DNA from: Auanema rhodensis | Taxonomy: Eukaryota > Animalia > Nematoda | Length of the DNA: 64,000 bases | Assembly (NCBI GenBank): GCA_964057225.1 | Contig: OZ059895.1 | Span: 13,888,001 to 13,952,000, forward strand | Direction of reading: 5' to 3' | Shown: positions 1 through 64,000 of the stretch, one piece after another | How positions within the stretch are numbered: the first letter of the stretch is position 1 | How the letters are laid out: the number at the start of each line of letters is the position of its first letter | Position numbers and translations under genes: made by a program | The notes under the pieces: model-generated | Databases searched by the model: none | Seen by the model: only the letters and a program-made list of their open reading frames with translations | Told to the model about the DNA's origin: nothing

Positions 1-872
1 TGGAAAGGAGCTGACGGACCAGCAAGATATAATTCAAATCCTATACATTATATCAAAAATCATCAGTCATGGACTACTCAACTTACTAGAGTTTACAAAG
101 AGTTTGGCTCCATTCAGGTGTGGCGATAATGTTTTTCTATTAAATATTGTCACTTTAGGGGCTAATAATGACGGGATGGTCACGGTACGATCATCTAGCT
201 TTACTTGCTGAGCTTTTACCAGTAGCATTACCCTCGTTATCAATGTGTATGGAAACGATATTGGTAATGTTTATTACTTTTATATCTTGGTTACCTTTAT
301 TCTATTTGTTTTAGGAAGCTAAACCCATTACTCAATTTCCTCAAACATATGAAAATATGAACTGCAGACCTCCTGTTGAAATGGGTTATGCTAGGGGTTG
401 CCAATTTCCTGGAAAAAATGTATATGAAATAGTCAATGAATATTACCGTTTTCATAATGAATTGAAAAAGTATCAGGAAGATTATGAGCTTAATGGATGG
501 CTTAGTAGAATGGCTGATAATCAGCTTGTTTCCAGTAAATGGTATATTGATGTAAGTTTTATTGTTCAATCCAATCCTCGATCAATTTATTATTTATTTT
601 AGAAAATTGAACCACTGGTTACTGATAAATATGAAAGAATTAAAGATATTGAATCAAGATTAAGATTCGAAATGGGAAAAATCTTTTTCCAGGTTTATAA
701 TTCTTATTAAATCGACATTTTAAAATATTTATTTCAGGATGCCATTGATGAATTTATTTTCACCTACATGGGCAATGATATAGAATGGTTAAAAAAGAAA
801 GTTGATACAATACAAAAAATTTCTGGAGTCAAATCGTTCCCTAAACGCCCTCTGAAATTAAAATCCCTTTAG
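1..872 (+). CDS. hex-3: GH20 hexosaminidase D-like protein (HEXDC family), 3' part; 5' end lies outside the window
   Basis: Spliced translation WKGADGPARY...|GLIMTGWSRYDHLALLAELLPVALPSL...; the TGWxRYDH motif is typical of HEXDC/nematode HEX-2..5. Four short GT-AG introns, TAG at 870-872, AATAAA at 911. The paralog name rests on recalled synteny with tmie-1/oxi-1. Confidence 0.85.
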
Positions 873-1229
873 AACAATATATACCAGCATTAATGGTTTT
901 ATATTCTGGTAATAAACATACGAGTATCTCTTAGGTGCCAAATGCCTCACTTGCTAAATGATAACAAACTTATTGCCCTTTTATGCCCCGTGCCTCATCT
1001 TGTATAATTTGCCTTTTGAATATTTAACCAACGAAATTGCTGCCTCTTATTTTATAATTTGCTCTATCATATGTTTGTTGTTTAGTTATTAAAAACTGTT
1101 TTAAAGTGTTTTTTAAATTTGATTTAAAAGCGTCTTACCGCTTCATATATTCAATTCAGTTTCCTTCAGAATATTGCGATTTGTGCGTTAAAGTATTTTA
1201 ATTTCCTTTCCACTTTACTTAATTAATTT

Positions 1230-1428
1230 CATCTCTGAAGGAACACGAGGCTGCTTCGAGACCCACCAGGGTCCTAATGGTGGCGCATTAATAGGTGGCT
1301 AAACGTTACTTTACAACCAACCTAAGAGCTCCGATGAAAATCATTCGGGCATAACTATTGGTCTTTGCACCAATACCACCTGTTGGCACTTGCCATTTTG
1401 TCTTTTGTCACTGTCGTACTCCTAGATG
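1230..1428. ncRNA. Candidate structured non-coding RNA, family unassigned
   Basis: GC-richer island with five nested or adjacent inverted repeats and no convincing ORF (see finding). Confidence 0.35.
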
Positions 1429-1481
1429 TCCTTTTTCTTAAAGATCTTACATTTTTTATTCAAAACATGTTTCAGAGCATA

Positions 1482-2002
1482 ATGGTTATGGACACAAATA
1501 GCCAATTATCTGCGTTAGATCAGCATGTTGCTCCAGGGTTAAGGCTATGGATGTTAATAGCTCTGGTTTCTGGAGTACTCCTCATTATGGGTTAGCAATA
1601 ATCCAACAAATATATGCAAAAACATATATATTTTTAGTTGTTCTTGTTTGTTGCTTTATGCGTATTCGTATTCCACGAACAAAAAGGCAAATTGATTTGA
1701 TAGCAGCTAAACGCAAAATGAGGAGTAAGAATAACAAGCAGAACACAGGTTTGTCATGTGATTCATATCTCGTTTAAATTCAATTTTTACTGGCAAATCA
1801 ATTTTCCTTTTTTGGTTCTGCCATCGTCACTACAACTCTAATGAAATTTAAAAAATTTAAAGTTTTTTTTATAGCTGATGAAAGAGCTCAAGCTATCGTT
1901 ATGAATTCTATGAGACCGAAAGGAAGTGTTCATCGTGCAGCTCCTGAGAATAGGGAAAAGGAAATCATGCATAAGGGTTCAAAAACCCAAACTGAAGTTT
2001 AA
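1482..2002 (+). CDS. tmie-1: TMIE (transmembrane inner ear protein) homolog, 3 coding exons
   Basis: Spliced: MVMDTNSQLSALDQHVAPGLRLWMLIALVSGVLLIM|VVLVCCFMRIRIPRTKRQIDLIAAKRK...|ADERAQAIVMNSM...TEV*. A single TM helix followed by the CC-x-RIPRTKxxI signature of TMIE. Confidence 0.88.
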
Positions 2003-53600: not shown

Positions 53601-56325
53601 ATCAAAATGGCTTTTCTAAGAGCATTCCCTAATCTTACAAGAAATTATATAGAACAACCGAATGTCAAAATATATATTCAAGATCAGTCTAAAGCTGGCG
53701 CACAAATTTTTTATGAGCTTGAAGATACAAGGTTTCATTCATCACAATTGAGTATAAATATTATATTTGAATCATTTACAGAGATATCAGAAATAAATCT
53801 GTATTAAAGCTTAAGGAAAAATATCATATCGGATCTCATGGTGGCCTTCAATCTCCTGTTCGTTTTTTGGAACAACCAGATTATCTTTCTGAGACTGAAT
53901 TCGATAATGGTCGTACTAGGTATTTGATTTCTCTATCTTCAACCTCTTTATTTATCTTTTTCATCAGAATGACTCCTACTGTTTGTCGGCCAGCATCTGC
54001 TATGGCTCATGCTGAATTCGGCCCTCCAAAGCCTGTGCGTCAGAAAAGTTATGATCCATACATGGATAGTTATGCAAGCGAAAATAGTTCCGTTATTGAT
54101 TCAAGAGCTTCAGTAACCAGAAGTGGAAGTACAACACCAGTTATTGATAGAGAATCCAGGTGCGCCAAATTATTATTAGTTTTTGTAAATTAGATATACA
54201 AATATTCTCAAAAATAATAATTAAACTTTCTAATTATTTTCTTTCTTTTTCTTTTCTTAAAAACATCTTTTTTTTTTCATTTTCAATATATTCTGATAGC
54301 TGATGTCACAGAGAAAACATTGAAAATTTTTCTAAAATAAAGTGGAGAGGTGGACACACATAACACCACTCTATAAGTTTCTCGACGTACATTCATCTCA
54401 AAGGTCAGAGAATAGACTTTATCTCTTTTCTCTAGAAATCTCGCAATTTACTATCATATTTCTTCTTTTCATTTTTAAAGAAATACAGTTCATATTGAGA
54501 TAATAAGAGTACAGATATAGACTATTCAAGATAATTTTTACTTTTTCACATCAAAATATATTTAAAAAATGAATAGAAAATATAAATTATCCAATAATTT
54601 CAGAGCAAGAATGGAAACCATGGAAAGACAATTAGCGGGACTTTCCAGTCTTGTTCATTCTGCATTGGTCAGCAAAGGTATGAGTGAAACAACTCATAAA
54701 GATATGGCAGATTTACGTAAAGAAGTAAAACATTATCAAAATTACGTTTTGTTGCAAAATTGTGATCATCATAGATTTTGGCATTGCATCCGGAGATACG
54801 AGAATCTTCTGAAGAACCAAGTTCTATTCCTGAAAGCTTAACTTCTCATACACATCATCAGTTGGGTGCTTTGAAGCATAAGATTCAACAAGCGAATTCT
54901 GAAATACATCAACTTCGACGAACAGCTCAGGTATCTTTTAAAAACTTATTTTCTAAACAACCAACACACATATTAAGGCTAATGCTCAAGCTGCTAGAAC
55001 CTATATCAAGGATGCCCAAGAGCAGATTGCTAATTTGATTCATGAAAAGTTAGGAGGAGGGAGTATTTCCAGTAGCACTCGACATTCCGAGACAGATGCA
55101 GAAGATATGGGAAGAGAGGAGCACGCAGAACGATTAGCTAATCTTCTCAACCAATTGACGTAAACTTTAAAGTATATTTTCGTGGTTACCTGTGAGTTAT
55201 AGAGAATTTGAACAAAACGTTGAAACAGTAAGAAGCAGTGTTCTGCAAACGAACAAGAAGCTTCGTATGTCGGAGGTTGAGCAGTTGACTGAAAATCTGA
55301 CTGAGATTGGTCGAACAGCTGCTGCTTTGAAGAGTAATCTTACGAGAAAAGAAAATAACATAACTTTTGCCAATTTAAGCGGAATTCCCACCTATTCAAC
55401 AATCTATTGAAAGACGGTTAAAAGCAGATATGGAGAGAATAGTTCGGGAAGAGAAATTTATTAAGGAGCAAACAGCTGCGGTAGATCAAACTCTACGCAG
55501 GTAATTATAATTTTTGAAATGAATGCAAAGGTTGCTTGGTTCAGATGTAAAGGATTGGCAAATATTATGGTTACAATGAAAAAATTAGCAATGGTTCAAG
55601 ATCCTTCGTTACGATCCAAAAAGGATAAAGATGTCGTTTCAAATGGGTCTGTTCAAACCCTAAATTCGATGCAACTTCAAAACGGTACAGCGGCACCTTC
55701 CCCCCCTGTTCTTATGACACATGCATCAGGTAGTCGTGCTCTATGTGCATCAATTAAAGAATATTTTAACTTTAAGAAGCTCCAAAGGATCGTCCCGCAG
55801 TTTTTACGCCTACTGTAGATGTTAGAGCTCAGCCAAACGTTCCGGAAATTATTCCGCCTGTACCCCCAGCCCCGAAATATTATCAGTCTCCAACATCTAG
55901 TCTCGATGGAATATTGGAAGAAGTAAGAATAAAAATTGAGATACAGAAACTAATATTTTAATAACTAGGTTGGGCAACCGGGACAACCACCTCGCCCCCC
56001 AAGTCGTTTTTCAGTTACTGATGTTCGGAATAAATTTACGAAAGTATGTTAGATACATGAATTCAATAGAGTAAAATAATTATTTTCAGCCCCCAGAATT
56101 GCCAGATCAGTTGAAAAGTTTGATAGAAGACGTTGCTCGCCGAGCATCACCTGCACCGGAGAGGGATATTGTTGCTGAAAGAAGGCAAATCCGTTTCAAG
56201 TAGTCTTCAATTCAAACTTAAATTTCAGGCATGATTTAGAAGAAAGACAAGAAAGGCTTGCTGAGAAACAGAAACAATTAAAGAATCAATTTCAACAGTT
56301 ACAACAACTTACACCATTGCCTTAA
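50675..56325 (+). CDS. AIP3-domain coiled-coil adaptor (SRCIN1/p140Cap - KIAA1217/Sickle tail family), with alternative starts at 50675 and 52135
   Basis: VFLQYNDEVKRSILP...AFLRAFP...KIYIQD...FYELEDTRDIRNKSVLKL (AIP3-type domain) and RARMETMERQLAGLSSLVHSAL (p140Cap-like helix); Pro-rich tail; ends LTPLP*. Confidence 0.85.
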
Positions 56326-56577
56326 CGTTATCAGAGAATTTATGGACTAATATATTTTCATATATTATTCTATTTGTTTTTGTTGACCGAAGATATATAG
56401 AATAAATTTATAAATTATCTAACCGTAGTTACAAGTCAAAAGAAGAACATGAACGAGAAATATAACAAGATAAACATCCTATCCTAAGTCTAATTGGTAT
56501 ATTTTGAGCTAGAAAAAATCAGAGAAAAAAAACGAAAATAAAGAAGAAAACTCAGACTAAATAACAACTGCATGGAA

Positions 56578-56850
56578 TCATAAACTGCGAGGCTGATTTT
56601 TAGCTATTAGGTCTTCAAGATCTTTCAGACTACGTTCAAATTGATCCAGCTCTTTCTGTAATTGCTTCTTTTTGAACACGGAATAATAATTCACACCTGA
56701 AACATTTGGTATAAAGAATTTATGATTAAACTATCAACCATTGAAGGAAAAGTAGATTTTGAAAAACTCAAATCCAGCTCCTGCTGTTACACCCAACGCA
56801 AATAAAGCGTCCAAACGAGAAGCTGCGACAGTAAAAATACTTCTAAGCAT
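56578..56850 (-). CDS. SMIM4/UQCC5 (UPF0640)-like mitochondrial microprotein, ~76 aa, 2 exons; missed by the ORF track
   Basis: MLRSIFTVAASRLDALFALGVTAGAGFEFFKIYFSFNG|VNYYSVFKKKQLQKELDQFERSLKDLEDLIAKNQPRSL*. GAGFEFFKI...YYSVFKKK resembles the SMIM4 GxxMEWxMI...FYxVYRRK motif. One phase-1 GT-AG intron. Confidence 0.72.
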
Positions 56851-56896
56851 ATTCTAAAAATGTAACAAGCTTATCAGTTGAATCATAGAAAGCTAA

Positions 56897-57223
56897 CTAT
56901 TTGAGATTAACGCCAAAGCCTGCTTTATCTGCTTCGATAAGTTCACGTTCTAAGCGCTCTCGCTCTTCCTGTCTAAGTGGCCTTACGTATTTATAGTAAA
57001 TACCGGTGTTCACGATACAATAGGAAGTACTGAATAAAATAAATCCAAGGATTGATCTAACAAAAGCTGAAACAAAATAAAAGTTACGAGGCATCATAAG
57101 ACAACAAGACAAACTCTTGTGAAGTATATCCAAGCGACGATTAGTGAAGATACGACGATATAATGGTCGTCTGTCCTCCCTTCTGCGTGATACCGTTGCC
57201 CAAAAGCTTGGGCTAAGAAACAT
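56897..57223 (-). CDS. COX14-like cytochrome c oxidase assembly microprotein, ~92 aa after removing a 48-nt in-frame intron
   Basis: MFLSPSFWATVSRRRED...RRLDILHK|TFVRSILGFILFSTSYCIVNTGIYYKYVRPLRQEERE. An Arg-rich presequence, then DxxHK, one TM helix and a charged tail, as in COX14. The ATG is preceded by a TTTTGCAG acceptor. Confidence 0.7.
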   Translation of the reverse strand: MFLSPSFWATVSRRREDRRPLYRRIFTNRRLDILHKSLSCCLMMPRNFYFVSAFVRSILGFILFSTSYCIVNTGIYYKYVRPLRQEERERLERELIEADKAGFGVNLK

Positions 57224-57600
57224 TGACCTGCAAAAGCGTTTGCATATTAATCATTTCTGAACAACTTAAAACAACTCAGAAAAGAAAAAAAACATTTAGA
57301 TTCGTAAGCAACTAAATCTTGATTGCTCTTGTTTTTATTAACAGAAAATCTGTAGAAACCGCTAGAAATTATGTAATTAATAGTAAAACAATGTTAGTTT
57401 CTAGTTTGAAATAGCAACATATGTTTCTTGTATATAATTTACCAAATATAAAATAGTTTAATTTTATTCCATGAATTGCTAACATATACATATAAAATAT
57501 CTTAATTAAGAATAAATTAAATTTCCAAAAAATAAAATTTTAAGAATAGACTTTTCACTCATCTAAGAAAAATTGGTCTTGAGAAGATTTAAACAAATAG

Positions 57601-57660
57601 CATTCGGACGGTCGCCGCCCTTTACTGCTCAATAGAGAGAGAACGTTGCTGTAACTGCCA
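57601..57660. promoter_or_regulatory. Probable bidirectional promoter core between the COX14-like gene and rde-4
   Basis: The only GC-rich patch (cggacggtcgccgccc...gagagaga) in an otherwise very AT-rich ~600-nt head-to-head interval. Confidence 0.4.
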
Positions 57661-57825
57661 AGTAGTAATTTAAAAATATTTTATATGTTTGGTCTTATAA
57701 TCAATGATTTTATTCTCTGAAATGATGTTTTTGACCGTATCTGATTACTATTTGCTTAACCGTGCTTCTTTTAGCTGTGTAGTTCACATTTATAGTACGA
57801 AAACGTATCCACTTTTATAGATATT

Positions 57826-59345
57826 ATGCCTCAGGATGTCAAAAGTCTTGATGACCTATTTGAAATTGTTCGGCCTGATGCTCCTGTACATTTAGAATGT
57901 TTAGAGTCTAATGTACCTTCTTCGACTCTTACCGTATGGTATTAACGCTGGTCCCTCTCATTGAATATTTTGTAGAAGACCCCTGTCTCCATTTTGGAGG
58001 AAGGATGTCCTCGGCTTTTTGATTGCTCTCCAAAATTTAGTGTGATATCTGAGCAAGAATATAATGTATGACTATCATCGCCAACTCATTTAGTTATGTT
58101 TTTTGTTTTCGGCTTCTATCTTTATCATGACATGTCGGGTGAATAGTCATCAAACTGAAGGTAAAGGAAAGTCGAAAAAAGTTGCGAAGCAGCTTGCTGC
58201 ATCAAACATGCTTATGCTGTTGTTGGAGCGGAATATCTCTTACGCCGAAAAATTTGGGCTCTCCGTGGAAAGTTTGGAGCAAGCGCGTATTTTTATGTTT
58301 GTTAGCTTTTTCGTTGCACTAGTGGTATATGAGAGCTTTCAGCGAATCTTCGATTCCGGATACTGAACTTCCAGGTACTTGTTCGGATTTCATTCCGGGA
58401 CAAAATTATATTAATCAGCTTACTGAAGTGTGCGTTGAAAATCTTTTTTTGTTGAGATTAGATTCTTTTAAAGGTGTAAGAAAAATAAACTGGACTCCCC
58501 ATTTTTTACTCAATCGGAAGAGGGTGCACCAAATGACAGAATTTATACCACTATCTGTCAGGTATTAGCGTAGCGTAGTTTAATTGAACTTTCGAACGTT
58601 TAGATTGGAGATGTGTCAGCTAAAGGACAAGCTAAACAAAAAAAAATGTCCAAAAGTTGTGCATCTTATGAAATGTTGAAAAAAATAGATGCTGGGTTAG
58701 TTCTCCCAGCTATTGAAGAAGTCGCTGTAGGTATGCTCTACATACGGGTTAACTAGTTCAATGCCACATTTTGTCCTTTAGGCTCCGACGTGAAGTATAA
58801 AAGTATTCCACCGGGAGATGACTTAGGGGCACCCATTTCCACTGACCCACAACTTGATTTAGAAACTTCTCTTCAAAATCTCAATCTTACTGATTTCAAT
58901 AAAGAATTTAAGATGCTAGAATCTAGATCTCTTTATGGTAGGTAGTGTTTTAAGGAATCTGATAAAGATTGATTGCGCTTATGAGAATTTACTTGCCGCT
59001 CTATTACGTGATAATGACCGTTCTCTGGTTCTTCTATCAATTTGGGTCTTCGCATCAATTATTCAGATTATCATTCGCGCAGTCAGTTACTTTCCACACG
59101 TGGCATTTAGCGAGAAAGGTCATTTCTCTAGTTGTCATATATCACAGATTATATCATTTTGATTTGCTGTATATTGGCTGTTAACTACTTCAACATATTT
59201 AGATAATCACCAATGTATGCTCAAGATTAGTTTTAAAAATGGTGACACTAAGACAACCGTTATCTTTCCCGGGATTGGTGATACGGAAGATGATGCTCGC
59301 AAGTGTGCAGCGAAAGAAGCAATTCTTCGTTTTTCTTCGCTTTGA
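57826..59345 (+). CDS. rde-4: RDE-4-like dsRNA-binding Dicer partner (2 dsRBDs plus a degenerate third)
   Basis: KTPVSILEE...GKGKSKKVAKQLAA (dsRBD1); NYINQLTEVCKKNKL...KGQAKQKKMSKSCAS (dsRBD2); HQCMLKISF...VIFPGIGDTEDDARKCAAKEAILRF*, which parallels the recalled RDE-4 C-terminus. The intron 2 acceptor is anomalous. Confidence 0.82.
58956..59180. ncRNA. Candidate structured RNA within the last intron of rde-4
   Basis: A 266-nt intron among ~45-nt introns, with two long enclosing helices and a 12/13-nt cross-pairing (see finding). Confidence 0.4.
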
Positions 59346-59511
59346 ATTAAAACTTCTATACTAATAATTATGTACATTGAGATATTCTATGAATGCATGT
59401 TTTTTTCCGTCTTAATTATTTTCTCATGTCGTATATATCGGAGTTATACATCATGTCTTGCTTGAAAAGTTTTGAATTGGATATTTTTTCCAGGTTTTGG
59501 GTTTCGCTATC

Positions 59512-61204
59512 ATGTCTCTGTCTGCTAATATCCTCAGAAGAACTTCCAGTCTTCTTTCTAAGGTAAGCGATTGGGTATTATGATATGTTGTTAATATGGA
59601 GTCCTTAGGCTTCTGGAGTTCCAGCTTGCTCATCAGTTGGATTCTCCACTGGTGCCGATCAATCAGCCAACTTGAAGGAAGTTTTGGCTAAGAAGATTCC
59701 TGCTCACAATGCCAAGGTTAAGGAGTTCAGAGGAAAGCACGCTAGCACTGTTGTGCAACAAGTTAATGTTGACATGGTATGTAATTATTTTAGCTGAATA
59801 TCATAGATATGAAATATTCCATTTCAGATTTACGGAGGTATGAGATCCATGAAGGGTATGGTCACTGAAACCTCTGTCCTCGACCCCGAGGAGGGTATCC
59901 GTTTCAGAGGATATTCCATCCCTGAATGCCAGAAGCTTCTTCCTAAGGCTGCTGGAGGTGAAGAGCCTATCCCAGAAGGAATCTGGTGGCTCCTCTGTAC
60001 TGGAGATATTCCATCCGAGAAGCAGGTAATAACTTGTTAAGTCTGCTTTCATTCAAATATGTTTTATAGGTTGCTGCTATCACCAAGGAATGGAATGCTC
60101 GTGCTGATCTCCCAGCTCACGTCGCTAGAATGTTAGACAACTTCCCAGATAATCTCCATCCAATGGCTCAATTCGTTGCTGCTATTGCTGCTTTGAACAA
60201 TGAAAGCAAGTTCGCTGCTGCTTACGCACGTGGAGTACCAAAGTCCGCCTACTGGGAGTATGCTTATGAAGATTCCATGGATCTTCTCGCCAAGCTCCCA
60301 ACTGTTGCTGCCATGATCTACCGCAACTTATACCGCGATGGATCCGCTGTAGGAGTTATCGACCCCAAGAAGGATTGGTATGAACTAAAATGAATCTCTT
60401 AGGTTTTACATCTAATTTTAGGTCTGCTAACTTCTGTTCCATGCTCGGATATGATGACCCATTATTCGCTGAGCTCATGCGTTTGTACCTCGTTATCCAC
60501 TCTGACCATGAAGGAGGAAATGTTTCTGCCCACACATCTCACCTTGTAGGATCGGCTCTTTCTGATCCATATCTCTCATTCTCTGCTGCTATGGCAGGTC
60601 TTGCTGGTCCACTCCATGGACTTGCTAATCAAGAAGTAGTAATAGGTTGTATTTCGCCATAACATTAATTTTTCTAGGTCTTGGTATTCTTGAACAAGAT
60701 TGTCTCTGAAGTTGGATTCAACTACTCAGAAGAACAACTCAAGGAATGGGTCTGGAAGCATCTTAAGAGCGGCCAAGTCGTCCCTGGATACGGACACGCC
60801 GTTCTTCGTAAGACTGACCCACGTTACGAATGCCAGCGCGAGTTTGCTCTCAAGCACTTGCCAAAGGATGACTTATTCCGTCTTGTATCCACCCTTTACA
60901 AGGTTACTCCCGATATCCTTCTCGAGCAAGGAAAGGTATGTTCATTTGCTATTTTAATTTTTAATCGCATTATATCTAGGCCAAGAACCCATGGCCAAAT
61001 GTTGATGCTCACTCAGGAGTCCTTCTTCAATACTTCGGAATGACTGAAATGTCCTTCTACACCGTTCTCTTCGGAGTTTCTCGCGCTCTCGGATGTCTTT
61101 CTCAACTCATCTGGGCTCGTGGTATGGGACTTCCTCTTGAACGCCCCAAGTCTCACTCTACCGAAGGATTGATGAAGCTTGCTGCTGCTGCTAGCAAGAA
61201 CTAA
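59512..61204 (+). CDS. cts-1: Citrate synthase, mitochondrial (copy 1, complete)
   Basis: [84 protein letters not shown]; N-terminal presequence; strong codon bias. Confidence 0.98.
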
Positions 61205-62613
61205 ACTCTATGCACTCGTTTTTTTTAGTTTTGATCCCCACATCTTAGAGATCATAGATATATTCTGAGAATGTAGATCATGATTACATTTCCCTTTCAT
61301 ATGTGAATTGCATTGTCATTGGGAATTTCTAATAAATATAATACTTACTAGTAAATATAGTTTCTGTTTATAAGAATTTCAACTGAAGGGTATATCGCAA
61401 CTTAATTGATATTACTTAAAACCAATTATGAAACATACCAATGCCATGGTTTTGGTTACGTAGTTTTTTCTTCGATGATCCAACTTTATTTTCATTGTAC
61501 TGTGTTCACCATTCTAAATTTGTTCGCAAAGAAGAAAACGTTTTACAAATTTCGAACCAATATGATAATAATAGAAGATGAACATGAAAGATTTTGAAGA
61601 TTGTTGAATAAATCCATGTACTAGCAAATTGCAAGAATTTCCAAGATATGATTTAATAAATTAAGTATTTTCCATTTTGCTATATTTGACTTTGAACTTT
61701 CAAAATCAAAGTATTGAAAAAATAAATATTATCGAAATAAAACAAACATGAAAAACGCGATGGTCATGTGTTCCACTTGGTTCTTGCGAATTAATCTCTT
61801 ACATGAAAAAAAAGCATTTTTAATTATCAAAATGGTCATTCATAGATGGGTGTGCTTTGGACTTAGCATTCTCTCCATTCTACAAATTGCCTTTTGATTG
61901 TTTATGTTGTCTTTATACCATAAATAAATAGCAATAATCTAGGAATGTCTTAGATTCAAGACTAAGAACTTAGTTCATGCCGTGTGACCAGCGGCGGTAC
62001 GTGGTCACCTTTTTTGTATTTTCATTTGAAGAGCAAAGGCTACAAATTTCAAAGATGCAACGCTCCAGATTCAAGATCTTCATTGTTAAGAAACTTATAT
62101 ATTGCGCGATGTGCGGAAGGTCAATCTGTAATCAAAGTCATTTTGTCTACGATCGTTTTAAGGGTTTATGCGCTCAGTTGTTCTATTCGTAAGGTTTTGG
62201 TTATATATGTGATAAATGGTTTTTTCAACATAAAATATAATTTTATATTTTTTTTTGTCATAAAATACATTCTTTAGAAGTATGACTTATGATGTGATTA
62301 AAGGTTTTCGCAAAATCATCATTAATAAATGAAGAGTCTTGGTAATTGATTCCTTTAATGATAATTGGGGGACTGGTCTGGAACAAATATTTATGTATTA
62401 CTTTTATCTCAAAATAATGCTTGCTTTGTACCTATTAGTTCAGATACTTATCTAATTTTTATGCTGAGTTACATTATCGTTTTTATGATTTGCTTTTACC
62501 TTTAGTTAACATTATTGTTTTTGTTACGTGTCGTATATATCGGAGTTATACATCATGTCTTGCTTGAAAAGTTTTGAATTGGATATTTTTTCCAGGTTTT
62601 GGGTTTCGCTATC

Positions 62614-64000
62614 ATGTCTCTGTCTGCTAATATCCTCAGAAGAACTTCCAGTCTTCTTTCTAAGGTAAGCGATTGGGTATTATGATATGTTGTTAATATG
62701 GAGTCCTTAGGCTTCTGGAGTTCCAGCTTGCTCATCAGTTGGATTCTCCACTGGTGCCGATCAATCAGCCAACTTGAAAGAAGTTTTGGCTAAGAAGATT
62801 CCTGCTCACAATGCCAAGGTTAAGGAGTTCAGAGGAAAGCACGCTAGCACTGTTGTGCAACAAGTTAATGTTGACATGGTATGTAATTATTTTAGCTGAA
62901 TATCATAGATATGAAATATTCCATTTCAGATTTACGGAGGTATGAGATCCATGAAGGGTATGGTCACTGAAACCTCTGTCCTCGACCCCGAGGAGGGTAT
63001 CCGTTTCAGAGGATATTCCATCCCTGAATGCCAGAAGCTTCTTCCTAAGGCTGCTGGAGGTGAAGAGCCTATCCCAGAAGGAATCTGGTGGCTCCTCTGT
63101 ACTGGAGATATTCCATCCGAGAAGCAGGTAATAACTTGTTAAGTCTGCTTTCATTCAAATATGTTTTATAGGTTGCTGCTATCACCAAGGAATGGAATGC
63201 TCGTGCTGATCTCCCAGCTCACGTCGCTAGAATGTTAGACAACTTCCCAGATAATCTCCATCCAATGGCTCAATTCGTTGCTGCTATTGCTGCTTTGAAC
63301 AATGAAAGCAAGTTCGCTGCTGCTTACGCACGTGGAGTACCAAAGTCCGCCTACTGGGAGTATGCTTATGAAGATTCCATGGATCTTCTCGCCAAGCTCC
63401 CAACTGTTGCTGCCATGATCTACCGCAACTTATACCGCGATGGATCCGCTGTAGGAGTTATCGACCCCAAGAAGGATTGGTATGAACTAAAATGAATCTC
63501 TTAGGTTTTACATCTAATTTTAGGTCTGCTAACTTCTGTTCCATGCTCGGATATGATGACCCATTATTCGCTGAGCTCATGCGTTTGTACCTCGTTATCC
63601 ACTCTGACCATGAAGGAGGAAATGTTTCTGCCCACACATCTCACCTTGTAGGATCGGCTCTTTCTGATCCATATCTCTCATTCTCTGCTGCTATGGCAGG
63701 TCTTGCTGGTCCACTCCATGGACTTGCTAATCAAGAAGTAGTAATAGATTGTATTTCGCCATAACATTAATTTTTCTAGGTCTTGGTATTCTTGAACAAG
63801 ATTGTCTCTGAAGTTGGATTCAACTACTCAGAAGAACAACTCAAGGAATGGGTCTGGAAGCATCTTAAGAGCGGCCAAGTCGTCCCTGGATACGGACACG
63901 CCGTTCTTCGTAAGACTGACCCACGTTACGAATGCCAGCGCGAGTTTGCTCTCAAGCACTTGCCAAAGGATGACTTATTCCGTCTTGTATCCACCCTTTA
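62614..64000 (+). CDS. cts-1: Citrate synthase (copy 2, runs off the window end)
   Basis: Near-identical to copy 1, including introns, at an offset of 3102 nt. Confidence 0.93.

What the first reader, a model, noticed from the sequence alone, without database searches (positions are those of the whole stretch)
56578..57223. Two mitochondrial assembly microproteins joined by an intron that splits the stop codon: candidate spliced dicistronic COX14-SMIM4 mRNA
Seen: on the minus strand the COX14-like ORF ends AAA TAG, and the SMIM4/UQCC5-like ATG begins 46 nt later with no AATAAA between. The G of the stop begins GTTAGC (the same donor as tmie-1 intron 1) and the spacer ends TTTTTAG|AAT ATG. This is a 44-nt GT-AG unit (56897-56854), the usual intron size here. 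Splicing it rebuilds a stop and gives ...AAA TAA AT ATG..., with stop and start 2 nt apart. Established: standard SL2 operons have ~100 nt between the poly(A) site and the trans-splice site; COX14 acts in COX1/complex IV assembly and SMIM4 in early complex III assembly. Inference: one mature mRNA may encode both proteins by termination-reinitiation or leaky scanning, or the acceptor may toggle between cis-splicing and SL trans-splicing, coupling complex III and IV assembly factors.
Basis: partly seen in the sequence, partly recalled or inferred. Interest (0 to 1): 0.8.

Follow-up and report, generated by a model that had tools for sequence, protein, structure and literature searches.

The report
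Spliced two-protein COX14–SMIM4 messenger RNA
In this nematode one mature, SL1-capped mRNA carries two conserved mitochondrial assembly microproteins, brought 2 nt apart by removing a 44-nt intron that starts inside the first stop codon; the same layout occurs in C. elegans and other nematodes, and its sequence suggests ribosomes reach the second protein by skipping the first, weak start codon.

Summary

**RNA evidence.** In four RNA-like public runs (one study), one 669-707 nt contig per run covers 57229 to about 56420 on the minus strand.
- An SL1 leader sits 4 nt before the COX14 AUG.
- Three introns are removed. One is exactly the predicted 56897-56854 unit, which gives AAA-UAA-AU-AUG.

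**The two proteins.**
- Gene A passes Pfam COX14 (37 bits against a cut-off of 25).
- Gene B is a divergent UPF0640/SMIM4-family protein. It scores 24 bits, below the cut-off of 27. However, a profile of its nematode orthologues reaches proteins that do pass.

**Conservation.**
- C. elegans (five RNA contigs) and a strongylid: an intron at the same place, giving an overlapping AUGA.
- Auanema: the same genomic sequence as the window; its splice is inferred.
- Panagrolaimus contigs: a 6-nt spacer with no intron.

**Start-codon signature.**
- In all seven clade IV/V transcripts, B's AUG is the second AUG of the mRNA.
- Every sequenced COX14 start there has T at -3. B's start has a purine at -3.
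- In Thelazia the genes lie 980 nt apart. Its COX14 has six internal ATGs and A at -3.

**Reading.** The best fit is leaky scanning, as in Drosophila sloth1/sloth2. Translation itself is inferred, not shown. The scan has noted two other candidate dicistronic mRNAs in this genome, but not this one.

The parts
57228..57235 (-). SL1 trans-splice acceptor (ttttgcag) of the dicistronic mRNA. The first exon base is 57227, so the 5' UTR after the leader is GUCA.
   Evidence: Loose ends at 57229 in runs X1 and X3 read, as reverse complement, GGTTTAATTACCCAAGTTTG, which is the SL1 sequence. Its last AG coincides with the acceptor AG.
57115..57227 (-). Exon 1: 4-nt leader plus the first COX14 coding part (ATG at 57223-57221, context GTCA-ATG-T, T at -3).
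   Evidence: Contig pieces 57115-57229 in all four runs; sequence.
57067..57114 (-). COX14 intron 1, 48 nt, GT-AG. It is in frame and contains ATGATG, which is removed by splicing.
   Evidence: Joint 57066/57115 in four runs. Pfam COX14 rises from 22.4 to 37.1 bits when it is removed.
56898..57066 (-). Exon 2: the rest of the COX14 coding sequence, ending with TA of the stop codon. The protein is 92 aa and has no internal Met.
   Evidence: Contig pieces; translation; Pfam PF14880 at 37.1 bits against a cut-off of 25.
56854..56897 (-). Intercistronic intron, 44 nt, GTTAGC...TTTTTAG. It begins with the G of the genomic TAG stop. It contains one ATG, which would open a 10-codon uORF if the intron were retained.
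   Evidence: Joint 56853/56898, skipping 44 nt, CT..AC on the plus strand, in four runs at depth 34-205. No AATAAA inside.
56739..56853 (-). Exon 3: A completes the rebuilt UAA stop, AU is the spacer, then comes the gene B start (ATG 56850-56848, A at -3) and the first coding part.
   Evidence: Contig pieces 56737-56853; mature sequence ...AAATAAATATGC....
56697..56738 (-). Gene B intron, 42 nt, GT-AG.
   Evidence: Joint 56694/56737 with the cut shifted by 2, in four runs.
56578..56696 (-). Exon 4, coding part: the rest of gene B (76 aa in all, UPF0640/SMIM4-like), with TGA at 56580-56578.
   Evidence: Orthologues share 26 invariant columns.
56419..56577 (-). 3' UTR as far as the contigs reach. 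Contig ends are not a mapped poly(A) site.
   Evidence: Contigs end at 56419-56423.

Best explanation
The locus makes one mature, SL1-capped mRNA of about 0.7 kb that is truly dicistronic. COX14 (92 aa) is the first cistron and a divergent SMIM4/UPF0640-family microprotein (76 aa) is the second.

Three short introns are removed. The middle one starts at the last base of the genomic TAG stop and ends 3 nt before the second ATG. The mature RNA therefore reads UAA-AU-AUG.

I infer that most 40S subunits scanning from the SL1 cap start at the COX14 AUG. A fixed fraction passes it, because it sits in a poor context (U at -3, U at +4). That fraction scans about 280 nt that hold no other AUG and starts at the gene B AUG, which has A at -3.

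The ratio of the two proteins would then be hard-wired by start-codon context, as shown for Drosophila sloth1/sloth2. One protein acts early in complex IV assembly, the other early in complex III assembly.

- **Shown:** the spliced dicistronic RNA, its SL1 cap, its conservation across species, and purifying selection on both ORFs.
- **Inferred:** that gene B is translated from this RNA, and that the route is leaky scanning.
For: **RNA in the window's species.**
- One contig per run, in four runs, spans 57229-56420 with joints 57115/57066, 56898/56853 and 56737/56694.
- It has an SL1 loose end at 57229.
- The intergenic stretch 57278-57774 has no coverage, so the runs behave as RNA.

**Protein identity.**
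- Pfam COX14 at 37.1 bits against a cut-off of 25; UPF0640 at 23.9 bits, E 3.8e-5.
- All 10 orthologues tested have UPF0640 as their only or best Pfam family.
- The orthologue profile reaches P0055 and P0063, which pass the UPF0640 cut-off. The ESM Atlas top cluster is UPF0640 at 0.92.

**Both ORFs are under selection.** Window against Auanema gives pS 0.73 and pN 0.054 for COX14, and pS 0.77 and pN 0.16 for gene B.

**Conservation of the dicistron.**
- C. elegans: the genome has a 43-nt intron between ...AAAAA and ATGA. Five independent RNA contigs show the spliced AAAAAAUGAUU, so stop and start overlap.
- Strongylid RNA contigs show AUGA.
- Auanema has the same TA|GTAAGT...GAG|AATATG.
- Panagrolaimus has UAA, 6 nt, then AUG, with no intron and no AG acceptor in the spacer.
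- COX14 lies directly upstream of gene B also in Steinernema, Aphelenchoides and Ditylenchus gene models.

**Leaky-scanning signature.**
- There are zero ATGs between the two starts in 7 of 7 clade IV/V transcripts (173-278 nt; mononucleotide-shuffle P 0.003-0.02 each). Their B cistrons hold 2-5 ATGs.
- COX14 has T at -3 and T at +4 in all 5 transcripts with a known start. Gene B has a purine at -3 in 7 of 7.
- Contrast: in Thelazia the genes are 980 nt apart, and COX14 has 6 internal ATGs and A at -3.
- An independent distant contig, L019, has a COX14-like ORF (hhalign 93.6%) upstream of a bona fide UPF0640 gene. There is no ATG in the 364 nt between the two start codons (shuffle P 0.0003) and T at -3.

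**Precedent.** sloth1 (SMIM4) and sloth2 are 5 nt apart. The upstream Kozak sequence is poor, and reporter assays support leaky scanning (PMC9681215).
Against: - No translation data were available: no ribosome profiling, no peptides.
- All RNA evidence for the window comes from assembled contigs of one study. Contigs drop minor isoforms and cannot give ratios or prove full-length single molecules.
- Given the Met-free COX14 protein, the lack of out-of-frame ATGs is only mildly unlikely per species (synonymous resampling P 0.04-0.38). Much of the AUG desert is therefore simply a protein without Met, and the lineages are not independent at the protein level.
- Very tight stop-start spacing (-4, +2, +6 nt) is not required by leaky scanning. 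It is what coupled termination-reinitiation would predict.
- L018 has one internal in-frame ATG.
- The splices in Auanema, L007 and L010 are inferred from sequence, not seen in RNA.
Confidence: 0.6

Rival explanations
1. Termination-reinitiation. Ribosomes translate COX14, terminate at UAA (UGA in C. elegans), and the 40S subunit stays on the RNA and restarts at the AUG 2 nt downstream (or overlapping). This would give obligatory coupling of the two proteins.
For: - Stop-start distances are tiny in every lineage: -4 (AUGA) in C. elegans and a strongylid; +2 in the window, Auanema and L007; +6 in Panagrolaimus and L010.
- In the three genomes where I identified it (the window, C. elegans and Auanema), the intercistronic intron is placed exactly so that splicing produces this closeness.
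Against: - The upstream ORF is about 90 codons. By established knowledge, eukaryotic reinitiation falls steeply after long ORFs unless a tethering element is present.
- No UGGGA (TURBS motif 1) lies within 120 nt upstream in any of the 7 transcripts.
- Reinitiation does not explain the conserved weak COX14 start context or the AUG-free first cistron.
Confidence: 0.2
2. The dicistronic RNA mainly serves COX14. Gene B protein comes chiefly from a minor monocistronic mRNA, made when the same acceptor (TTTTTAG|AAU) takes a spliced leader instead of the COX14 donor.
For: - In Thelazia the acceptor abuts the ATG of gene B 980 nt downstream of COX14, as expected for a trans-splice site. The acceptor may therefore be an old trans-splice site.
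- Contigs drop rare variants, and four contig pieces were not listed.
Against: - Every listed contig covering gene B's start, in the four runs of the window's species and in five C. elegans samples, is cis-spliced to COX14. None begins with SL1 or SL2.
- The Panagrolaimus spacer UUCAAA has no AG acceptor, so gene B there cannot be trans-spliced just upstream.
- There is no AATAAA in the 44 nt for 3'-end formation of a separate COX14 mRNA.
Confidence: 0.15
3. Assembly artefact or non-functional readthrough: the contig joins two separate mRNAs, or gene B is not a real protein.
For: De Bruijn contigs can merge overlapping transcripts. The tool warns that a contig across two genes shows no single transcript.
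Against: - The 56898/56853 joint itself needs RNA molecules that join the end of COX14 to gene B's start region, and it has exact GT-AG ends.
- The same junction is found independently in C. elegans (five samples) and strongylid contigs.
- Gene B is under strong purifying selection and conserved across nematode clades.
Confidence: 0.03

Closest known systems
Drosophila sloth1/sloth2 (human SMIM4 and C12orf73/UQCC6) bicistronic smORF transcript, PMC9681215
   Same: - One mature mRNA encodes two single-pass mitochondrial inner-membrane microproteins of 60-90 aa.
- One of them belongs to the SMIM4/UPF0640 family.
- The cistrons are a few nt apart (5 nt in the fly; -4 to +6 nt here).
- The upstream start context is poor and the downstream one good.
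- Leaky scanning is shown by reporters in the fly.
   Different: - The partner is COX14, a complex IV factor, not C12orf73.
- The SMIM4-like ORF is downstream here and upstream in the fly.
- Here the closeness is made by splicing out an intron that starts in the stop codon.
- The mRNA is SL1 trans-spliced.
- That paper does not mention nematodes.
C. elegans gene models Y70G10A.4 and its upstream COX14 gene (chromosome III, next to rde-4)
   Same: This is the orthologous locus with the same synteny (rde-4 and citrate synthase as neighbours). The deposited annotation already has the two CDSs overlapping by 4 nt after splicing. RNA contigs confirm it.
   Different: - Stop and start overlap (AUGA) instead of being 2 nt apart.
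- The donor lies before the stop rather than inside it.
- The public name 'ATP synthase subunit e' is not supported by sequence.
- I found no paper describing the pair.
Nematode SL2-type and SL1-type operons (my own knowledge of the Blumenthal-laboratory literature)
   Same: Two co-oriented genes are transcribed from one promoter, and the first is SL1 trans-spliced.
   Different: Operon pre-mRNAs are cut into monocistronic mRNAs by 3'-end formation plus SL trans-splicing. Here the intercistronic stretch is removed as a cis intron and the mature mRNA stays dicistronic.
Viral termination-reinitiation (calicivirus or influenza B type AUGA/UAAUG with TURBS)
   Same: Overlapping or near-overlapping stop and start codons.
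   Different: No UGGGA motif is present. This is a cellular mRNA, and its first cistron is AUG-free.

Membership tests
COX14 (Pfam PF14880) | Whole-protein score at or above the curated cut-off (25 bits) | tested here: met
   The spliced 92-aa protein scores 37.1 bits, E 2.7e-9, over profile positions 3-57 of 59.
COX14 (Pfam PF14880) | Acts in early COX1/complex IV assembly in the mitochondrial inner membrane | not testable with these tools
   Function is inferred from family membership only.
UPF0640 / SMIM4 (UQCC5) (Pfam PF15114) | Whole-protein score at or above the curated cut-off (27 bits) | tested here: not met
   The window protein scores 23.9 bits, E 3.8e-5. Ten orthologues score 16.7-22.4 bits, always with UPF0640 as the only or best family.
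UPF0640 / SMIM4 (UQCC5) (Pfam PF15114) | Homology to accepted members by profile search | tested here: met
   The profile of 13 nematode orthologues finds P0055 (E 3e-8) and P0063 (E 2.6e-4) in 1.84 billion proteins. Both pass the cut-off at 33.6 and 34 bits. The ESM Atlas top cluster is UPF0640 at 0.92.
UPF0640 / SMIM4 (UQCC5) (Pfam PF15114) | Binds UQCC1/UQCC2 and supports cytochrome b/complex III assembly | not testable with these tools
   Known for human SMIM4 and fly Sloth1 (PMC9681215). Not tested for nematodes.
Mitochondrial ATP synthase subunit e (the public name of the C. elegans orthologue) | Sequence match to subunit e families or to solved subunit e chains | tested here: not met
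   No ATP-synt_E hit in Pfam for 11 proteins. The profile search of PDB sequences at E up to 10 returns no ATP synthase chain.
SL2-type operon | Roughly 100-nt intercistronic region with a poly(A) signal, and a downstream mRNA capped by SL2 | tested here: not met
   There are 46 nt with no AATAAA. The region is removed as a cis intron, and no leader is seen before gene B in any listed contig.
SL1-type operon | Poly(A) site of the upstream gene abuts the SL1 trans-splice site of the downstream gene, giving monocistronic mRNAs | tested here: inconclusive
   Only cis-spliced contigs are seen. Contigs cannot exclude a minor SL1-capped gene B form.
Bicistronic smORF mRNA translated by leaky scanning (sloth1/2 type) | Both ORFs on one mature mRNA | tested here: met
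   Junction-spanning contigs with a 5' SL1 leader. The same is seen in C. elegans and a strongylid.
Bicistronic smORF mRNA translated by leaky scanning (sloth1/2 type) | Weak upstream and strong downstream start context, with no AUG between them | tested here: met
   T at -3 in 5 of 5 COX14 starts; a purine at -3 in 7 of 7 gene B starts; zero intervening ATGs in 7 of 7 transcripts.
Bicistronic smORF mRNA translated by leaky scanning (sloth1/2 type) | Downstream output rises when the upstream AUG is weakened and falls when it is strengthened | not testable with these tools
   This needs reporters or genome edits.
Termination-reinitiation with TURBS | UGGGA-type 18S-complementary motif upstream of an overlapping stop and start | tested here: not met
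   No TGGGA within 120 nt upstream in 7 transcripts.

The most novel reading that the evidence does not exclude
The COX14-SMIM4 dicistron may be an old, obligate translational unit of nematodes, possibly predating the clade III-V split.
- Under this reading, the intercistronic region and trans-splice acceptor of an ancestral two-gene unit (the state kept in Thelazia) were captured by a donor at the COX14 stop codon and turned into a cis intron.
- Leaky scanning on the resulting mRNA would then fix the ratio between the early assembly factors for COX1 (complex IV) and cytochrome b (complex III).
- Together with two other candidate dicistrons noted in this genome, this would mean that nematodes use true polycistronic translation alongside SL-resolved operons.
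Probability: 0.3. Interest if true: 0.75.

Novelty: new variant of a known kind. Interest (0 to 1): 0.62.

Why it matters
Nematodes are the textbook case of animals that resolve polycistronic transcripts into monocistronic mRNAs by spliced-leader trans-splicing. Here a mature mRNA stays dicistronic, is conserved from Panagrolaimus to C. elegans, and carries the full sequence signature of leaky scanning.

- **Different pairing.** It joins an SMIM4-family complex III factor to COX14, a complex IV factor. In flies, lampreys and choanoflagellates SMIM4 is paired with C12orf73. This suggests repeated selection for fixed-ratio co-translation of respiratory-chain assembly microproteins.
- **Testable.** The locus exists in C. 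elegans, so start-context edits, AUG insertions and intron deletion can test the mechanism directly.
- **Annotation.** It flags a probable misnaming of the C. elegans protein Y70G10A.4 as ATP synthase subunit e.
- **Gene prediction.** Gene predictors mishandle the pair: fused or frame-shifted models occur in Steinernema, Aphelenchoides and Ditylenchus.

Tried and rejected
- **SL2 or SL1 operon reading:** rejected as the main form. The spacer is cis-spliced, has no AATAAA, and no SL-led gene B contig was found.
- **'ATP synthase subunit e' identity for gene B** (the public C. elegans name): no Pfam or PDB sequence support.
- **TURBS-like UGGGA motif for reinitiation:** absent.
- **Synonymous-codon resampling as a strict test of ATG avoidance:** only weakly significant per species (P 0.04-0.38). 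The claim therefore rests on the combined pattern and the Thelazia contrast, not on that test.
- **BLASTP of the L019 upstream ORF against Panagrolaimus COX14:** not significant. Only the profile comparison linked them.
- **Literature searches:** COX14+SMIM4+elegans, Y70G10A.4, A0A1D3PD11, COX14+bicistronic, and Caenorhabditis+bicistronic+smORF+leaky scanning found no description of this pair.
- **Look-ups for Nippostrongylus and Steinernema hermaphroditum orthologues:** no contig on record.
- **Species of the window:** not identified. Its nearest relative in the data is Auanema sp. JU1783 (COX14 93% and gene B 70% amino-acid identity, synonymous sites saturated).

Full report
**Observation.**
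- On the minus strand, an ORF starts at ATG 57223 and ends AAA TAG at 56899-56897.
- The next ATG is at 56850.
- The 44 nt at 56897-56854 run from GTTAGC to TTTTTAG and hold no AATAAA.
- The first ORF contains an in-frame 48-nt GT-AG intron (57114-57067). The second contains a 42-nt one (56738-56697).
- Spliced, the ORFs give proteins of 92 and 76 aa.

**RNA evidence.** One search for public runs returned four runs of one study. They hold 44% of the sampled words of the 1.3-kb stretch, about what its exons alone would give.
- Laid on 56000-58100, each run gives one contig of 669-707 nt covering 57229 down to 56419-56423. It has three joints: 57115/57066, 56898/56853 and 56737/56694. All have GT..AG ends on the minus strand and no mismatches.
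- The loose end beyond 57229 reads, in reverse complement, GGTTTAATTACCCAAGTTTG. This is the SL1 leader, joined at ttttgcag|GUCA-AUG.
- The runs are labelled RNA only as a guess, but they behave as RNA. Introns are absent, a spliced leader is present, and the intergenic 57278-57774 has no coverage.
- The mature RNA is therefore SL1, GUCA, the COX14 ORF, UAA, AU, the gene B ORF, then about 160 nt of 3' UTR.
- Limits: these are assembled contigs from one study. They show presence, not proportions, and minor isoforms could be missed.

**Identity of the proteins.**
- Spliced gene A scores 37.1 bits on Pfam COX14 against a cut-off of 25.
- Gene B scores 23.9 bits (E 3.8e-5) on UPF0640, the SMIM4 family. 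This is below the cut-off of 27.
- Ten nematode orthologues all have UPF0640 as their only or best family, at 17-22 bits.
- A profile of 13 orthologues (A1) was searched against 1.84 billion representatives. It found 53 proteins. Two of them, P0055 and P0063, pass the UPF0640 cut-off. The ESM Atlas top cluster is also UPF0640.
- I therefore file gene B as a divergent UPF0640/SMIM4-family member.
- The C. elegans orthologue is Y70G10A.4 (NP_001380199.1). It is publicly named 'ATP synthase subunit e'. Neither Pfam nor a profile search of all PDB sequences supports that name.
- Both ORFs are under strong purifying selection between the window and Auanema. Synonymous sites are saturated, and pN is 0.054 for COX14 and 0.16 for gene B.

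**Conservation.** The locus is syntenic with C. elegans chromosome III, with rde-4 divergent upstream and citrate synthase nearby.

| Species or contig | Clade | Arrangement | Evidence |
|---|---|---|---|
| C. elegans | V | 43-nt intron between ...UUCAAAAA and AUGAUU; the spliced form has the COX14 UGA overlapping gene B's AUG | Five RNA contigs from five samples; deposited gene models overlap by 4 nt |
| Strongylid (L008, L009) | V | The same AUGA | Two RNA contigs |
| Auanema sp. JU1783 | V | TA\|GTAAGT...GAG\|AATATG, 43 nt; gives the window's UAA-AU-AUG | Splice inferred |
| L007, L010 (panagrolaimid-like) | IV | Donor AA\|GTAAG at the stop, acceptor 3-9 nt before the AUG | Splice inferred |
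| Panagrolaimus (two contigs) | IV | UAA-UUCAAA-AUG with no intron and no AG in the spacer | Contigs, DNA or RNA not known |
| Steinernema glaseri, Aphelenchoides, Ditylenchus dipsaci | IV | COX14 directly upstream of gene B | Fused or frame-shifted gene models |
| Thelazia callipaeda | III | rde-4, COX14 and gene B keep their order, but the genes are 980 nt apart; an AATAAA lies between them and an acceptor abuts gene B's ATG | Genome |

**Mechanism.** Several features point to leaky scanning.
- In all seven clade IV/V transcripts, gene B's AUG is the second AUG of the mRNA.
- There are no ATGs in 173-278 nt (mononucleotide-shuffle P 0.003-0.02 each). The B cistrons of similar length hold 2-5 ATGs.
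- COX14 has no internal Met in these species.
- The COX14 AUG has T at -3 and T at +4 in all five transcripts with a known start. Gene B's AUG has a purine at -3 in seven of seven.
- Thelazia, where the genes are uncoupled, has six internal ATGs in COX14 (four of them Met codons) and A at -3.
- An unidentified distant contig, L019, adds an independent case. Its neprilysin is closest to Romanomermis, at only 32% identity. It carries a COX14-like ORF (hhalign 93.6%, E 2e-7 against the nematode profile) 109 nt upstream of a bona fide UPF0640 gene. No ATG lies in the 364 nt between the two start codons, and the upstream start has T at -3.

This is the signature described and tested by reporters for Drosophila sloth1/sloth2. 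There the SMIM4 orthologue and C12orf73 lie 5 nt apart on one mRNA (PMC9681215).

Three caveats apply.
- Given the Met-free protein, avoidance of out-of-frame ATGs alone is only mildly unlikely (P 0.04-0.38 per species).
- The tiny, conserved stop-start distance fits termination-reinitiation better. However, the first ORF is long for that route and no UGGGA motif is present.
- Nothing here measures translation.

My estimates are:
- about 0.6 for leaky scanning as the main route;
- 0.2 for reinitiation;
- 0.15 for a minor SL-capped monocistronic gene B mRNA being the real template;
- about 0.03 for an assembly artefact.

**Role of the intron (inference).**
- In the window the intron holds an ATG that would open a 10-codon uORF. 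Auanema's intron also holds one. Removal therefore keeps the path to gene B free of AUGs. The C. elegans and L007 introns have no ATG, so this is not general.
- The Thelazia state suggests the acceptor began as a trans-splice site in front of gene B. A donor at the COX14 stop would later have captured it. This is a hypothesis only.

**Comparison with what is known, and novelty.**
- The kind is known: bicistronic smORF mRNAs for mitochondrial assembly microproteins that involve SMIM4.
- The C. elegans gene models already encode the overlap.
- Searches of the paper library found no description of a COX14-SMIM4 dicistron, of Y70G10A.4, or of a nematode case.
- New here are:
  - the partner (COX14, complex IV);
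  - the order of the ORFs;
  - the intron that starts in the stop codon;
  - the occurrence in a phylum thought to resolve polycistrons by trans-splicing;
  - the breadth of conservation.
- I rate it a new variant of a known kind.
- Two unchecked notes of this scan report other candidate dicistronic mRNAs in the same genome. I did not test them.

Noticed in passing
window 59416-64000: Tandem duplication with a 3102-nt period covering the citrate-synthase-like gene. 59801-60998 and 62903-64000 differ at 1 of 1098 bases, and the ORFs are identical but for one residue. This is either a very recent duplication or an assembly artefact.
   Followed up: partly
window 57819-58066 (+ strand): The divergent rde-4-like (dsRNA-binding) gene is also SL1 trans-spliced: the loose end CCAAGTTTG sits before 57819. 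It has a 42-nt intron at 57934-57975. Only about 590 nt separate the two SL1 acceptors, so the two genes probably share a bidirectional promoter region.
   Followed up: partly
window 56389-56423: The contig of the convergent plus-strand gene ends at 56389-56392. The contig of the dicistronic mRNA ends at 56419-56423. The two 3' ends therefore lie only about 30 nt apart.
   Followed up: no
L001 (C. elegans chromosome III, BX284603.4:10219418-10225709), about 60-2370: The large first intron of the C. elegans COX14 gene holds a long inverted repeat. ORFs on opposite strands are identical, for example 839-1045(-) and 1388-1594(+).
   Followed up: no
P0005 = C. elegans Y70G10A.4 (NP_001380199.1, A0A1D3PD11): This protein is publicly named 'ATP synthase subunit e, mitochondrial'. 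Sequence evidence points instead to the UPF0640/SMIM4 family, so it is probably misnamed.
   Followed up: yes
L019:89-683 (Logan SRR29421768 contig): Unidentified AT-rich organism whose neprilysin is closest to Romanomermis at 32% identity. A COX14-like ORF lies 109 nt upstream of a bona fide UPF0640 ORF, with no ATG between the two starts. The pairing may be older than clades III-V.
   Followed up: partly
L018:1600-2264 (Logan SRR22764699 contig): GC-rich nematode-like contig. The COX14 stop is followed by GAAGG|GTAGGC...TTTTCAG|GTGAACG-ATG of gene B. This is a possible intercistronic intron that lies wholly in the spacer. COX14 here keeps one internal in-frame ATG.
   Followed up: no
P0018, P0021, P0023, P0024, P0025, P0043: Deposited gene models in Steinernema glaseri, Aphelenchoides besseyi and A. 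fujianensis, and Ditylenchus dipsaci fuse COX14 (or its +2 frame) to gene B. Gene predictors mishandle this dicistron.
   Followed up: partly
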